A DNA stretch of 64,000 bases from positions 571,312-635,311 of the forward strand of contig JAWQFM010000014.1 in the NCBI GenBank assembly GCA_033442325.1, given 5' to 3'. This DNA is from Salpingoeca rosetta. Lineage: Eukaryota; Protista; Choanoflagellata. This document shows positions 44,963 to 50,241 of the stretch, in pieces. The notes below the pieces were generated by a model that worked only from the letters and a program-made list of their open reading frames with translations, was not told the DNA's origin and ran no database searches. Every line of letters begins with the position of its first letter. Position 1 is the stretch's first letter. The position numbers and the translations under genes were made by a program.

Positions 44963-47900
44963 ATGGCTGCTTTGGTCAATCAGAGCAAGAAACAGCACTA
45001 TGTGCAGGGTGAAGAGGCCAGGCTACAAGCAGACGTGCTTGTGTTGATGGAAGTGCTGCAGATGGCAGGTAGGTTGCTACAAGGGCACCGCAACTGTGCT
45101 TGGTTGATGCTGTGTGCGTGAACCCTTGACTGCTGTTGATACACGCAACAATCCGCATGCTGCTCCTGCGACTTTTACACATTCGCGCGCTTTTGCACCC
45201 TCAAACACACACTCACACACACACACACACTCTCTCTCTCTGTCTGTCTCTCTCTTGCTCTGTCTCTTTCTCCACACACACACACACACACCACACACAC
45301 ATTCACATATTATCCGCGCCTTTGCCCTCGTACATACATCGTCAGCCAAGGAACGAGATGTGGATCAAGTGTGTCAGGTGCTCAACACTGCCCTTGGTCT
45401 TGTGAAACAAAGCAGCAGCGCAGACGCATTCCTCGCGAAGCTTGGGTTCTTTGCGTACGCATTGCGGCTCTGTGACAGATTCTCCGATCAGGTTCGTGCA
45501 CGCAGATCATCGGCTGATGCTCGCCCCCCATCACGCAGTGCACGTGCCATGTTTCCGCTGCCATTCTCATCTCCATGCTGTGCTTGTATTGGTTGCACAA
45601 GGTTAAACTGAGCTCCTGTGTACTTCAGCTGTTCAGAGCATCCGCCACCATTGACGACAGCTGCCTCAGACTGGTCAGTGCGCTTCGTGCATACGTATAC
45701 ATGTCATGATTGCTCAGAATACCCAATGACGTCAACAAATACCTGTGCATCATACGCACGCACACACACGTACACACCCTGCTGAGCGACACAATATCTC
45801 TCTTCTTCCACACAGGCGAGGAGCACAACCTCTGCGTGCTTGTACACGTTGATGCACTCACTCAGCCCCTTCAACACACATTTGCATTCGCAACACACTC
45901 TACACACTCACTGACACTAGCTGGTGAGCAGGGTAAAAGCCCTTCAGCTGATGCGCGACAAGGAAGGCGTTGCTCTTTTGGGACAACAGGCCGTGGTTCA
46001 ACAAGCATGCGCCTCAGGTGCGTGTCGAACATGGCTGTTCAGATATGCTGTCCTCCCCCCCCCCCACGAAGCCATTCATGTTGAGCATTTGTGTTTGCCG
46101 CTCCGAGTGAGTGATCGACCTTACCCGCATATAAAAGTCTGTCTTTTCCACGTCCCTGTCTGCACTCATGTGTCGGTACAATGGCTCTGCGCTTGTTCTT
46201 TTGTCGTGACACTGCAGAGGTACGACGCGCCCAATATGGCCAGGACCTGGTCAGCATGCTGCTGGAGCGCTGCCTCATGATCCGTGCAGATGACAACGAA
46301 GACGTGTGGGCCATCTGGACACAGCAACTGCGCCTCCTAATCCAGCTCATCCAACAACCTTCCGTCAACCCCCAGTTCCAGGAACAGGTTGTACACCGAT
46401 GGGTGCCCTTCGATCTGTGACTTTGAAACATGTGTGCGTGCGTGTGCGTGTGTGTGTGTGTGTATGTATGTATGTATGTGTGTGTGTGCGTGTGTGTGCG
46501 TGTGTGTGCGTGTGTGTGTGTGTGTGTGTGTGTGTGTGTGTGTGTGTGTGTGTGTGCGTGTGCATGCCGTCGTGCTGGCATGTGGCTCGCCTTGACTGCT
46601 GGTGCCACTTGCATTGGGCGATGCCGTTGCGTCGTCTCGTACAAGTATACTCCTGAACACAGTCCTTTATTCTGCCTGAACGCACAACGCATCCGCAAGC
46701 ACAACCTACAACACAACTCCTCCTCTGACACGACGCCCCGTGTGCACTCACGCTTTTGCGCGTTGGATCAGGTGTTGCCACTGGTGGAGGCCATCTTTGA
46801 GGAAGGTTTGCTTCTGCGCACAGAACTGAAGGAGGAAACACGTCTCGACTGTTGTTGGCTTGCTGCCGCTGTGACACAAAACAACGGTGGGTGAGTGAAC
46901 GGAGCAATGTGTGCATGTCTGGAAGGCGGTTGTCTTTGTGATACGAGGTCTCATTATCCGGAGTACCCCACCCTCCTTCTCTTTGAGGCCTTTTGCGTTG
47001 CTTGAACGGCGGCGAAGCTACACCTGGTGTATTGCAGTCAATAACGTCGCTCGGCTGCTGCCCACACAACTTACACATTTGTACTCCTTCTGTGCTCCAT
47101 TGTCCTGTGCAGTCAACGTGCAGACTCAGTTAAGCAAACACATTGTGGAGCAGACGCTCGCCTTCCTCGAGCTCTTGTGCGTTTTCACATCAACGCAGGA
47201 ACTTGTTTGGGTCAACTGGCGAGCGTGTGCCGGTGCTTGTGTGTGTGTGTGTGTGTGCGCGTGTGTACGTGTGTGTGTGCTTGTGCATGTGTGTATGTGT
47301 ATGTGTGTGTGTGTGTGCAGTCACATCCCCTTGGGCTGCATATTCATGTCACCGTATTTCATATCATGCAAGAGTCTTTGGGGCCAGGCGTACGCCGCCC
47401 AGCAACCCTAGCGCAGCGCATGCTTGTTCTTGTTTTCATCTGCTCGCCTGCTTTCACACGGCCCAACGGCCCGTGCATGCATGCCACTGGCAGGTTGAAG
47501 CGGCACTCAAACCTGGCAGCGAGCGCGACAGCTGCGCCGTTGCAGTTCCTCGCCGGTCTGTCATTACACAAGCGTAAGTGCCCTCCGGCCGTTGAGCACA
47601 GAGTACACACTTCGAGAGCACACACACCACGTGTACAGAGCACGAGTGTGCGTAGTCTCACATGCAGCACCTATCTTCTTGTGTGTGGGGAACTGCAGAC
47701 GATGTGGCAGTGGCACTGGGGAAGCAACGCTTGTTTGTGCAGCTGATGGACATTGTGGCCTCAAGCTCAGATGCAGCACAGTTGATTGTGAGTCCCTGCT
47801 ATGTCGCAGCATATACCAGCATGATTGAGTGTGCGACAACGTTCTTGACGAACAAGCAGCCACCTTGCTGGCTGATGTTGTTGTGCACACCAGAAACTCA

Positions 47901-50241
47901 TGCTTGCATGGATCGCTGCTGTGTTGTACACAAACGTGTGTGTATGTGTGTGTGTGTGCCACAACACAGGAAGCGGCACTGCAAGCATGGTCACCCAAGA
48001 CGGAGGCAGAGTGCAAGATTGTGATGCAGGCAGTTCGGTCGGCAAGCGGCAGTGACAACGCTGTGCCAGGAGGTGTGGCCGACGGGCATCAGAGCTGGGT
48101 CGTCATCGTGAGGGCCAAGAGCAAAGAAGTCCGCGAGGCCGCAACTCGCGCTCAGCGGCACCCTTTGCCCATGTTCTTCCCCACGAGCCGAACCTTTCGC
48201 CAGCACCCTCCTCAGCGCGTCCTGGCACCGGCAGCTTCCAGAACAATGCACGCCGCCCAGTCCCCTTTTCACATCAACCCTCAACGTCAACAGCAGCAAG
48301 AACGCTCGCACCCACTGCACCGGCCGCACAGCCGGGTTGGTCAACACGCACAGCTACATCGGCTGCTCTGGCTCTCTCCACACAGCCGCCAGCCAGAACC
48401 GCAGCTTCGGCAACAACATCACGCGCGCCATCAGCCCTGTGCATCGCCCCGCCTTCGTCCTCGCCTTCCACTGCACGATTCGTCCGAAACTGAGGAGGAG
48501 GCGGCAGAGGAGGAAGACGATAGCGACAGCAGCCACGGAAGCAGCAATGCACGTGCGAAGCACGTGCGACAGGTGCAGCCCGCAACCGCCGCGGTCACTC
48601 GGGGGAGCAGCGTCTTAACGACCACCGTCAAACCTGCATTGATCAGCGCAAATATCACCAACGTCAACACAAGCGTCGCCACTGCAGCCCAGCATCCTGG
48701 CTCGCCGGCACCAGCGCCACCGCAGGAACACGTGCGCAGCCCCAGCAGTACCAGCGGCGGCACCAACAGCAGTGATGTTTGCGGCGGGGCCAGCGGAGAC
48801 GAGTCAGCGGCGCCAGCAACGCCGCCGACAACACCGTCACCAGCAGCGCCACAATGTGTATCTTCACCGCAGGCGCCATGTCCAGGTGTTGTCGCTCATG
48901 CTGCTGACGCGCCACAATCACCAACGCTGCCGCTGCTATCGTCGTCTCCACCAGCCCACCACAGCGGACGAAGGGTGCCCTCGCAGTACAGCGTCATCAA
49001 AATGCCGATGCAGGTTCCACGGCTATTCCTCAGCACGCAGCAGCGCCACAAAAGCATGTACAGAAGCAACACTGGCTCGCGTGGCCTCGGTGGCACGACG
49101 GGACGCCGGCGTCAACACCAGCAGCAGCAACGAGAGGACCGAGGTCGTGGACGCCGTCAGCTACGCCGCCGACGCGTTGCGTTCACGCCACAAGAGGATG
49201 AGTATATCCGCCTTGGCGTCAAGCGGTGTGTGTTGACGAGTTGCCTGGCATGTTGATGTGTTGGCACGTGCAGCGCGTACTCTATGTGTGCTGTCGTGCT
49301 GTGTACACGGTTGTGCAGACGTGCACGCTGGGGTGTTCAGCTATTCTCTGTCTCTGTCTCTCTCTGTCTCTCCCCCCCCTCTCTCCCCTCACACACACAC
49401 TCTCTGTCTCTGTCTGTCTCCCTGTCTGTCTCTCTCTCTCTGTCTCTCTCTCTGTCTCTCTGTCTGTCTCTCTGTCTGTCTCTCTGTCTGTCTCTCTGTC
49501 TGTCTCTCTGTCTGTCTCTCTGTCTGTCTCTCTGTCTGTCTATCTCTCTCTCTGTCTCTCTCTCTCTCTGTCTCTCTGTCTGTCTCTCTGTCTGTCTCTC
49601 TGTCTGTCTCTCTGTCTCTCTCTCTCTGTCTCTCTGTCTGTCTCTCTGTCTGTCTATCTCTCTCTCTCTGTCTGTCTATCTCTCTCTCTCTGTCTGTCTA
49701 TCTCTCTCTCTCTGTCTCTCTCTCTCTGTCTCTCTGTCTGTCTCTCTGTCTGTCTATCTCTCTNNNNNNNNNNNNNNNNNNNNNNNNNNNNNNNNNNNNN
49801 NNNNNNNNNNNNNNNNNNNNNNNNNNNNNNNNNNNNNNNNNNNNNNNNNNNNNNNNNNNNNNNAAAAAAAAAAAAAAAAATAAAAAAATCAAAATAAATA
49901 TTCAATATGCGGGTGAATCGAGGTCCAGAACCGACTCTTCCCCCATCTCTCTCTCCCTCTCTCTCTCTCTCTCTCTCTCTCTCTCTCTCTCTCTCTCTCT
50001 CTCTCTCTCTCTCTCTCTCTCTCTCTCTCTCTCTCTCTCTCTCTCTCTCTCTCTCTGTGTGTGTGTGAAGGCACACGTGTCTGTCTGCCCACCCTCTAAC
50101 TGCTGAGACACCCGTGTTGTTGCACTGCGCAGGTTTGGGCGGCGCTGGGAGAGTATCCTAGCTGTGTACGCGTTTCACCCAAGTCGAGATGGCCAGGCGC
50201 TCATGAAGCGATACGACCGTGTCCTCACCAGCACCAACTGA
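44963..50241 (+). CDS. TERB1: TERB1 (CCDC79)-like protein: N-terminal ARM-like repeats, disordered middle, C-terminal Myb domain
   Basis: Spliced Myb [21 protein letters not shown]|[30 protein letters not shown] (exons ..49225 / 50133-50241). ARM-region blocks [32 protein letters not shown] and [16 protein letters not shown] are collinear with human TERB1 as I recall it. Confidence 0.7.
49764..49863. other. Assembly gap (N run) within a (CT)n/(CTGT)n-rich intron
   Basis: Run of N. Confidence 1.

What the first reader, a model, noticed from the sequence alone, without database searches (positions are those of the whole stretch)
44963..50241. Apparent TERB1 ortholog (meiotic telomere-nuclear envelope linker) in a probable choanoflagellate
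Seen: an ARM-like N-terminus plus a terminal Myb domain. Established: this ARM+Myb architecture defines TERB1, which links TRF1 telomeres to the LINC complex via TERB2-MAJIN and, as far as I recall, has been traced only to the metazoan ancestor. Recalled human vs this sequence: KTDLNLLLECL / [11 protein letters not shown]; LVTIHSICQQNSNASVYFREIG / [22 protein letters not shown]; LWSSVCSTL..NNPQNDENQ / [19 protein letters not shown]; CSFIGLTLANNTYVQ / [15 protein letters not shown]; RKNFTEEEVNYLFNGVKKMGNHWNSIL / [27 protein letters not shown]. Inference: animal-type bouquet machinery predates animals. I do not see a clear TRF1-binding LxxP motif.
Basis: partly seen in the sequence, partly recalled or inferred. 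Interest (0 to 1): 0.9.

Follow-up and report, generated by a model that had tools for sequence, protein, structure and literature searches.

The report
Probable TERB1 gene in a choanoflagellate

Summary
The window is Salpingoeca rosetta. The gene at 44963-50241 (+) is PTSG_05206, annotated as hypothetical. Eleven exons encode about 340 residues of ARM-type solenoid, a long low-complexity linker and a terminal Myb domain.

The N gap lies inside the last intron. Joining exon 10 to exon 11 gives a Myb that passes Pfam cut-offs. A marine metagenome ortholog has the same intron site and phase, in 134 contiguous bases. The public model reads into this intron and loses half the Myb.

For TERB1:
- The Myb profile's best match in the whole PDB is the mouse TERB1 Myb (E 5.9e-9, ungapped), ahead of TRF1.
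- A protein-language-model search puts three TERB1 clusters first, at lead-level scores.
- The genome has a four-exon TERB2 gene (PF15101, 88.7 bits) carrying the YxLxP motif.
- ARM similarity to TERB1 is collinear but weak, with one intron shared exactly.

Against:
- phmmer, Pfam and a mammal TERB1 HMM do not link the ARM domain to TERB1.
- No TERB2-binding zinc motif, no TRF1 motif, no MAJIN and no TRFH were found.
- There is almost no RNA evidence.

Verdict: probable TERB1 ortholog (about 0.75). The meiotic role is inferred.

The parts
44963..45068 (+). Exon 1: start codon and first ARM helix (D-x-L-x-L-M-E-x-L, like TERB1 TDLNLLLECL); ends in phase 1
45346..45491 (+). Exon 2 (ARM)
   Evidence: Matches P0001; conserved in L012 and L013
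45602..45673 (+). Exon 3 (ARM)
45921..46017 (+). Exon 4 (ARM)
46218..46387 (+). Exon 5 (ARM; best-conserved exon among the choanoflagellate-type orthologs; carries the NPQ motif)
46772..46886 (+). Exon 6 (ARM). It ends ...QNN followed by a phase-1 intron, at the same site and phase as the mammalian TERB1 intron after ...ANN
47113..47176 (+). Exon 7 (ARM), with the annotated donor
   Evidence: the stronger-looking alternative donor at 47224 is not favoured
47494..47555 (+). Exon 8 (ARM), with the annotated donor
   Evidence: L013 has exons 8 and 9 fused with no extra residues, which supports this boundary over the gtaagt donor at 47573
47699..47787 (+). Exon 9 (ARM); preceded by a phase-1 intron within 2 residues of a mammalian TERB1 phase-1 intron
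47970..49225 (+). Exon 10: end of the ARM domain, the low-complexity linker and the first half of the Myb; ends in phase 2 (CG|gt)
48165..48197 (+). Motif [11 protein letters not shown] just after the ARM domain. The core LPxxFPTSRTF is shared by all three orthologs. Candidate partner-binding peptide (inferred)
48201..49148 (+). S/P/A/R/Q-rich linker of about 315 residues, mostly absent from the L012 and L013 orthologs (S. rosetta-specific expansion)
49164..49225 (+). Myb domain, first half ([19 protein letters not shown] + CG)
49226..50132 (+). Intron 10, full of CT repeats; contains the assembly gap 49764-49863
50133..50241 (+). Exon 11: second half of the Myb (FGRRWESIL...KRYDRVL) and the TGA stop; missing from the public gene model

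Best explanation
PTSG_05206 is a choanoflagellate ortholog of TERB1. It has an N-terminal ARM solenoid, a disordered linker and a C-terminal TERB1-type Myb.

The proposed role is an adaptor that attaches chromosome ends to the inner nuclear membrane LINC complex during meiotic prophase, together with the S. rosetta TERB2 homolog. In animals the ARM domain binds SUN1 and the Myb is a protein- or chromatin-interaction module.

Shown here: the gene structure, the ARM fold, the TERB1-type Myb, conservation of the architecture in two other environmental relatives, and a TERB2-family gene in the same genome.

Inferred: orthology of the ARM domain, binding to TERB2, telomere localisation and meiotic function.
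For: GENE MODEL. Eleven exons give 761 aa, against 727-768 aa for mammalian TERB1. The Myb is at the extreme C-terminus, as in TERB1.

MYB DOMAIN.
- The joined Myb passes Pfam cut-offs.
- The single S. rosetta Myb's best single-domain hit in the PDB is mouse TERB1 Myb 1x58 (25.7 bits, 50 residues ungapped).
- A two-species choanoflagellate-type Myb profile puts 1x58 first in the whole PDB, at E 5.9e-9 and 39.1 bits. TRF1 scores 24.8 bits and the best MYB21 domain 21.1.
- It shares TERB1's F in place of the first Trp and Y or H in place of the third Trp. It also lacks the TRF K-D-R recognition residues (alignment; PMC8867601).
- A mammal TERB1 HMM hits this Myb at E 3e-6, scaled to a proteome.

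WHOLE PROTEIN.
- Whole-protein hhalign is end-to-end collinear (S. rosetta 16-761 against TERB1 7-759, Prob 88.8, E 2.5e-6). Most of that score probably comes from the Myb.
- In the protein-language-model search, ranks 1-3 of 7.7 million clusters are all TERB1 (0.88, 0.87, 0.87). The next family scores 0.82.

ARM DOMAIN.
- My own global profile alignment gives z 3.9; 0 of 200 column shuffles reach the real score.
- Only 1 of 250 exon-block permutations reaches the real score.
- The intron after NN is shared exactly, in phase 1, with mole-rat TERB1. A second intron lies within 2 residues.

ORTHOLOGS. Contigs L013/L014 and L012 keep the ARM part, the LPxxFPTSRTF motif and the Myb first half (weakly in L012). 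L013/L014 also keep the full split Myb.

PARTNER. PF15101 (TERB2) matches four collinear exons on C17 over profile positions 1-207. The best exon scores E 1.3e-23 and 88.7 bits, with no hits in 14 control genomes. The 223-aa model carries YVLTP at 94-98, the motif reported in all TERB2 sequences (PMC7227075).

EXPRESSION. Only 2-9 reads per run landed on the stretch, from roughly a quarter (24-26%) of each of three 2026 RNA runs. This fits a stage-restricted gene but is weak evidence.
Against: - phmmer of the ARM domain against 1.84 billion representatives finds no TERB1.
- Pfam finds nothing in the annotated protein.
- The mammal TERB1 HMM detects only the Myb.
- hhalign on the ARM part alone gives Prob 1.2 and E 0.045.
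- Protein-language-model scores below 0.9 count only as leads. With the ARM part alone, no TERB1 cluster is listed.
- No match to the TERB1 T2B helix-turn-helix zinc motif was found, and no conserved Cys/His pattern appears in the three linkers.
- No [F/Y/I]xLxP motif is present.
- The only MAJIN hit is translated CA repeat.
- No TRFH hit was found.
- The intron inside the Myb is not shared with mammals, whose Myb lies in one exon.
- Only mammalian TERB1 sequences could be fetched, so sponge and cnidarian TERB1 were never compared.
Confidence: 0.75

Rival explanations
1. It is a true TERB1 homolog, but its job is not the animal meiotic one. For example, it could be a general telomere or chromatin protein, or an ancestral form that does not bind TERB2. 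On this view the animal TERB1-TERB2-MAJIN wiring was assembled later.
For: - No T2B zinc motif, no TRF1-binding motif, no MAJIN and no TRFH were detected.
- In L013 the linker between the conserved FPTSRTF motif and the Myb is only about 60 residues, and in L012 about 80, with no T2B-like sequence.
- The conserved peptide is a different one, LPxxFPTSRTF.
Against: - TERB2 has no known role other than bridging TERB1 and MAJIN, and it is well conserved here over both its N- and C-terminal regions.
- The gene is nearly silent in the sampled cultures.
- Failure to detect T2B with a mammal-only profile is weak evidence. MAJIN is short, and here it would probably be split by introns.
Confidence: 0.2
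2. It is a lineage-specific ARM-Myb protein that resembles TERB1 by convergence: generic ARM repeats plus a degenerate telomeric-type Myb. It is not an ortholog.
For: - ARM sequence similarity is statistically weak.
- Some circular shifts of the ARM profile score nearly as well as the real register (-131 against -119).
- One exact intron coincidence is only about a 1-in-10 event by my rough estimate.
Against: - The Myb is closest to TERB1 among all solved Myb domains, by a wide margin and without gaps.
- The three nearest protein-language-model clusters are all the pre-specified family.
- The length, the domain order and the near-identical coordinates of the collinear motifs agree.
- TERB2 is present in the same genome.
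Confidence: 0.12
3. The ARM part and the Myb exon beyond the N gap belong to two different genes, or the scaffold is mis-joined at the gap.
For: - The gap is unresolved and no DNA contig of run X1 bridges it.
- No spliced RNA read was reported.
- The public model stops before the gap.
Against: - Two independent metagenome contigs (L013, L014) carry the same exon order with a 134-nt gap-free intron at the identical codon and phase.
- Only the joined halves pass the Pfam Myb cut-offs.
- The alternative, the annotated read-through, adds 9 residues and a stop and leaves half a Myb.
Confidence: 0.03

Closest known systems
TERB1 (telomere repeats-binding bouquet formation protein 1, CCDC79) of animals
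   Same: - N-terminal ARM solenoid of about 340-380 residues, a disordered middle and a single Myb at the extreme C-terminus.
- Similar total length.
- A Myb with F and Y in place of the first and third Trp, and without the TRF DNA-recognition residues.
- Collinear short ARM motifs at nearly the same coordinates.
- One intron at the same site and phase.
- TERB2 co-occurs in the genome.
   Different: - ARM identity is only about 20%, and HMMER does not detect it.
- No T2B zinc helix-turn-helix and no IxLxP TRF1 motif were detected.
- The Myb is split by a phase-2 intron, whereas it lies in one exon in mammals.
- A conserved LPxxFPTSRTF motif was not seen aligned to mammalian TERB1.
- S. rosetta has a low-complexity insertion of about 300 residues.
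TRF1/TRF2 (shelterin Myb proteins)
   Same: A single C-terminal telomeric-type Myb. These are the second-nearest group of Myb domains in the PDB.
   Different: No TRFH dimerisation domain; an ARM domain instead. The K-D-R and Trp positions of the recognition helix are replaced. The score is 14 bits lower than for the TERB1 Myb.
Generic ARM-repeat proteins (SPAG6, ARMC8, Ric8, importin-alpha)
   Same: They are fold-level neighbours of residues 17-342 (TM 0.57-0.65).
   Different: No Pfam Arm or HEAT repeat reaches significance. None of these families has a terminal Myb.
Fission yeast Bqt1-Bqt2 and budding yeast Ndj1 bouquet adaptors
   Same: They do the analogous job of linking telomere proteins to SUN proteins in meiosis.
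   Different: They share no sequence or domain relationship with TERB1 (PMC7227075).

Membership tests
TERB1 | N-terminal ARM-repeat domain (mouse aa 16-384) | tested here: met
   Met at fold level. The Atlas model of residues about 17-342 aligns to ARM/HEAT proteins at TM 0.57-0.65. The exons are about one repeat long and four introns are phase 1.
TERB1 | Sequence homology of the ARM domain specifically to the TERB1 ARM domain | tested here: inconclusive
   Against: phmmer finds none, the mammal HMM finds none and hhalign on the ARM part gives E 0.045. For: global profile z 3.9 with 0 of 200 shuffles, 1 of 250 block permutations, one exact shared intron, and the top three protein-language-model clusters for the whole protein are TERB1. 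Non-mammalian TERB1 was not available.
TERB1 | C-terminal Myb of the TERB1 type (degenerate recognition helix) | tested here: met
   It passes the Pfam Myb cut-offs. The top hit in the whole PDB is mouse TERB1 Myb 1x58, at E 5.9e-9, ungapped over 50 residues and 14 bits above TRF1.
TERB1 | T2B: zinc-chelating helix-turn-helix that binds the TERB2 N-terminal domain (human aa 590-649) | tested here: inconclusive
   The full-length mammal TERB1 HMM with filters off reports no domain there. No Cys/His pattern is conserved across the three linkers. A mammal-only profile is a weak probe. A complex prediction could not be run, because the spliced TERB2 protein has no id or reference.
TERB1 | TRF1-binding IxLxP motif | tested here: not met
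   No [FYI]xLxP is present in any of the three orthologs. The motif is reported as mostly vertebrate-specific, so it does not define the family across Metazoa (PMC7227075).
TERB1 | Partner TERB2 in the same genome | tested here: met
   PF15101 matches four collinear exons at G000:C17:1012720-1014151, with a best E of 1.3e-23 and 88.7 bits. The 223-aa model carries YVLTP.
TERB1 | Partner MAJIN in the same genome | tested here: not met
   The only PF15077 hit (E 0.33) is a translated CA repeat. A six-frame, exon-by-exon search is insensitive for a short, intron-split gene.
TERB1 | Meiosis-specific expression and localisation at telomeres on the nuclear envelope | not testable with these tools
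   Only 2-9 reads per run landed on the stretch in three RNA runs. There are no mating-induced data.
TERB2 (the C17 gene) | Match to Pfam PF15101 above the cut-off over the N-terminal (TERB1-binding) and C-terminal (MAJIN-binding) regions, plus the [F/Y]xLxP motif | tested here: met
   Profile positions 1-207 are covered collinearly and 88.7 bits exceeds the 27-bit cut-off. YVLTP lies at 94-98. phmmer of single exons against the PDB found nothing.

The most novel reading that the evidence does not exclude
The TERB1-TERB2 module for attaching meiotic telomeres to the nuclear envelope arose before animals, in the common ancestor of choanoflagellates and animals, and still works in S. rosetta meiosis. 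TERB2 may be engaged through a different peptide (LPxxFPTSRTF or another linker element) than the vertebrate zinc T2B. MAJIN would be either highly diverged or replaced.
Probability: 0.55. Interest if true: 0.75.

Novelty: new member of a known kind. Interest (0 to 1): 0.62.

Why it matters
The published survey places the origin of TERB1, TERB2 and MAJIN in the metazoan ancestor and lists only animals (PMC7227075, text and Tables S1-S3). My full-text searches found no paper linking TERB1 or TERB2 to choanoflagellates or Holozoa.

A choanoflagellate TERB2 (solid) and a TERB1 (probable) move that origin back. They also make the question testable in S. rosetta, which from my own knowledge can be induced to mate and edited by CRISPR.

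There is a practical point too. The public model of PTSG_05206 is truncated at the assembly gap and lacks half its Myb. That plausibly explains why domain- and PSI-BLAST-based surveys missed it.

Tried and rejected
SEQUENCE AND FAMILY SEARCHES.
- phmmer of the ARM domain against 1.84 billion representatives returned only the protein itself and two environmental fragments.
- Pfam on P0001 found nothing.
- PDB searches with the linker plus half-Myb, and with exon 11 alone, found nothing useful.
- Atlas searches with the ARM part alone listed no TERB1 cluster.
- Searches of the S. rosetta genome with mammal TERB1 Myb and ARM profiles found nothing. They therefore give no reciprocal information and show no competitor.

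READS.
- The shorter stretch gave too few RNA reads for any junction.

FETCHING TERB1.
- I seeded an alignment with the mouse Myb shown in the output.
- The last protein search returned only the best 120 hits, all mammals, so invertebrate TERB1 stayed out of reach.

OTHER DEAD ENDS.
- My first semiglobal alignment statistic was degenerate and I discarded it.
- A first shuffle run timed out.
- The MAJIN hit was rejected as CA-repeat translation.
- The TRFH search was empty and uninformative.
- TERB2 exons against the PDB found nothing.
- My own stronger-looking donors for exons 7 and 8 (47224, 47573) were dropped. The L013 ortholog supports the annotated boundaries.
- The fragment alignment for structure prediction was badly misaligned, so I ran no AlphaFold job.
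- Complex prediction was not run. The spliced TERB2 protein exists only as my own model, with no id or reference to give the tool.

HUMAN SEQUENCE. The human TERB1 protein (P0045) was used only for string checks and alignments. No human contig was used.

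
Full report
WHAT IS THERE

The window is Salpingoeca rosetta (G000:C14:571312-635311). A search with the large open frame 47829-49253 returned one protein, PTSG_05206, annotated as a 'hypothetical protein' of 735 aa at 100% identity.

Reading the sequence and fitting exons to that protein gives eleven exons on the + strand:
- 44963-45068
- 45346-45491
- 45602-45673
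- 45921-46017
- 46218-46387
- 46772-46886
- 47113-47176
- 47494-47555
- 47699-47787
- 47970-49225
- 50133-50241

The public model shares the first ten exons. It then reads past the donor at 49225 into the intron, adding nine residues and a stop. It therefore lacks exon 11 and half of the Myb domain. The corrected protein has 761 residues.

THE ASSEMBLY GAP

The gap at 49764-49863 lies inside intron 10 (49226-50132). It is flanked by long CT microsatellites and a poly-A run, so the reading frame across the gap is irrelevant.

Three observations show that the two sides belong together:
- Exon 10 ends in phase 2 (CG|gt) and exon 11 begins with G after cag, restoring an Arg codon in the middle of a Myb domain.
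- Neither half reaches the Pfam cut-offs alone. Joined, they pass PF13921 (28.2 bits against 22.9) and PF00249 (26.5 against 24.4).
- Related genes exist elsewhere, and one of them has the same intron without a gap.

On the third point, two short environmental proteins found by phmmer led to contigs L012, L013 and L014. L013 and L014 come from different marine samples. Both carry the same exon order, and their Myb is split at the same codon in the same phase (CG|GTGAGC...CAG|G) by a 134-nt uninterrupted intron. The second Myb half and a stop codon follow.

DNA contigs of run X1 end at the microsatellites, so the gap length stays unknown. RNA reads were too few for any junction: 2-9 reads per run, from roughly a quarter (24-26%) of each of three runs.

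DOMAINS

Residues about 17-342 form an ARM/HEAT-type solenoid. Pfam sees no repeat. The Atlas model superposes on Ric8, SPAG6, ARMC8 and importins at TM 0.57-0.65.

A motif LPxxFPTSRTF follows the solenoid and is shared by all three orthologs.

S. rosetta then has a linker of about 315 residues, rich in S, P, A, R and Q, that the other two largely lack.

The protein ends with a single Myb, a few residues before the stop.

IS IT TERB1?

The Myb gives the clearest answer.
- In the whole PDB, the S. rosetta Myb's best single-domain match is mouse TERB1 Myb 1x58, at 25.7 bits and ungapped over 50 residues. PMC8867601 identifies 1x58 as TERB1.
- A profile of the S. rosetta and L013 Myb domains puts 1x58 first at E 5.9e-9 and 39.1 bits. 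TRF1 scores 24.8 bits, zebrafish Terfa 24.1, and the best MYB21 domain 21.1.
- The alignment shows TERB1's substitutions: Phe for the first Trp, and Tyr or His for the third. The Lys-Asp-Arg positions that TRF1 and TRF2 use to read telomeric DNA are replaced, as PMC8867601 describes for TERB1.

To compare the rest of the protein, I fetched TERB1 proteins by seeding an alignment with the mouse Myb printed. Only mammals were returned.
They lie at nearly the same coordinates as their S. rosetta counterparts: 13/22, 37/48, 175/173, 188/186, 223/225 and 671/709.
- Pairwise BLASTP is weak but collinear (151-294 against 153-301, E 0.22).
- A mammal TERB1 HMM finds only the Myb, at E 3e-6 on a proteome scale.
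- Whole-length hhalign is collinear end to end (Prob 84.5-88.8, E about 1e-5 to 1e-6). The ARM part alone gives Prob 1.2 and E 0.045.
- In my own global profile-profile alignment of the ARM parts, the real score exceeds all 200 column shuffles (z 3.9), the reversed profile and every circular shift. It also exceeds 249 of 250 permutations of whole exons. The similarity is therefore position-specific but modest.

Mapping the mole-rat TERB1 gene (L019) shows one phase-1 intron per ARM repeat.
- The S. rosetta intron after ...QNN (phase 1) coincides exactly with the TERB1 intron after ...ANN (phase 1).
- A second phase-1 intron lies within two residues, next to an alignment gap.
- The first of these sites is also kept in L012 and L013.
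- The intron inside the Myb is not shared with mammals.

An independent method, the protein-language-model search of the whole annotated protein, lists three TERB1 clusters as ranks 1-3 of 7.7 million, at 0.88, 0.87 and 0.87. The next family scores 0.82. These scores are below the tool's 0.9 mark and count as a lead. But TERB1 was the family hypothesised beforehand.

PARTNERS

Pfam TERB2 (PF15101) matches four collinear exons at C17:1012720-1014151, covering profile positions 1-207. The best exon scores E 1.3e-23 and 88.7 bits, and 14 control genomes give no hits.

I could splice these exons into a 223-aa protein with GT-AG introns. Human TERB2, from memory, is about 220 aa. The model carries YVLTP at 94-98. 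This is the [F/Y]xLxP motif that PMC7227075 reports in all TERB2 sequences, at 86-90 in mouse and human.

By eye it also has an E-D-Y-K-T-D stretch that could correspond to the human D55-Y56-E58-D59 TERB1-binding patch (PMC6361898). I could not verify that alignment.

Other partner searches:
- The single MAJIN (PF15077) hit is translated CA repeat.
- TRFH gave nothing, and that search was uninformative.
- In the TERB1-like protein I found no T2B zinc helix-turn-helix and no [FYI]xLxP.

MECHANISM

- The ARM domain would be the SUN-facing platform.
- The degenerate Myb would be a protein or chromatin contact.
- Some linker element would bind TERB2.

The domain structure, the Myb type and the presence of TERB2 are shown. 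Every interaction and the meiotic timing are inferred from animal TERB1. The near-silence in the sampled cultures is compatible with this reading but proves nothing.

NOVELTY

PMC7227075 dates the complex to the metazoan ancestor and lists only animals. I found no paper connecting TERB1 or TERB2 with choanoflagellates. Family databases may already list the S. rosetta TERB2 protein; I could not check that.

I rate this as a new member of a known family in a new lineage, with about 0.75 confidence in orthology and about 0.55 in the conserved meiotic role.

Noticed in passing
G000:C17:1012720-1014151 (+), locus L010 2221-3652: A clear TERB2-family gene. Four exons give a 223-aa model with GT-AG introns, a poly-Q linker, YVLTP at 94-98 and a strongly conserved C-terminal (MAJIN-binding-type) region. 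The animal-only survey PMC7227075 does not list it.
   Followed up: partly
window 49226-49256: The public model PTSG_05206 reads through the exon 10 donor into the intron (…GVKR then CVLTSCLAC and a stop) and omits exon 11. The annotated protein therefore has only half a Myb and gets no Pfam hit.
   Followed up: yes
L013 (4866 bp, ERZ27287911), L014 (ERZ17098661), L012 (3574 bp, Logan SRR14727191): Environmental contigs carry orthologs of the gene at 30-50% identity per exon. L013 and L014 are marine, with 53% GC in L013. L012 has 34% GC. Their linkers between the FPTSRTF motif and the Myb are much shorter: about 60 residues in L013 and about 80 in L012, against more than 300 in S. rosetta. 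The source organisms are unknown.
   Followed up: partly
window 48165-48197; L013 about 4200; L012 2714-2746: An LPxxFPTSRTF peptide lies directly after the ARM domain and is conserved in all three orthologs. I saw no counterpart in the mammalian TERB1 alignments. It may be a partner-docking motif.
   Followed up: no
L012 3040-3330: In the AT-rich ortholog the second half of the Myb seems to lie in two different frames (…KMYNNHEQ / AILLNHSFEYRRNQL). This could be an assembly frameshift, a further intron or decay. I did not resolve it.
   Followed up: no
window 45196-45307, 46428-46570, 47223-47324, 49340-50060: Several introns of this gene carry long CA/GT or CT microsatellites. These broke the Logan contigs of the DNA run and blocked read laying.
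   Followed up: no
window 44495-44566: A perfect (GCTGGT)n hexamer repeat lies about 400 bp upstream of the start codon. It overlaps mechanical ORFs on both strands that read as poly-(AG), (LV) or (HQ).
   Followed up: no
L011 3601-3894 (G000:C13:469600-469893, -): The only MAJIN (PF15077) hit in the genome is a translated CA repeat (an H/T-rich 'protein'). It is a false positive.
   Followed up: yes
L019 (Nannospalax galili TERB1 gene, 51 kb): Mammalian TERB1 has nearly one exon per ARM repeat. Of its 17 introns, 14 are phase 1, and in the ARM region most fall just after a conserved N or NN at a repeat end.
   Followed up: partly
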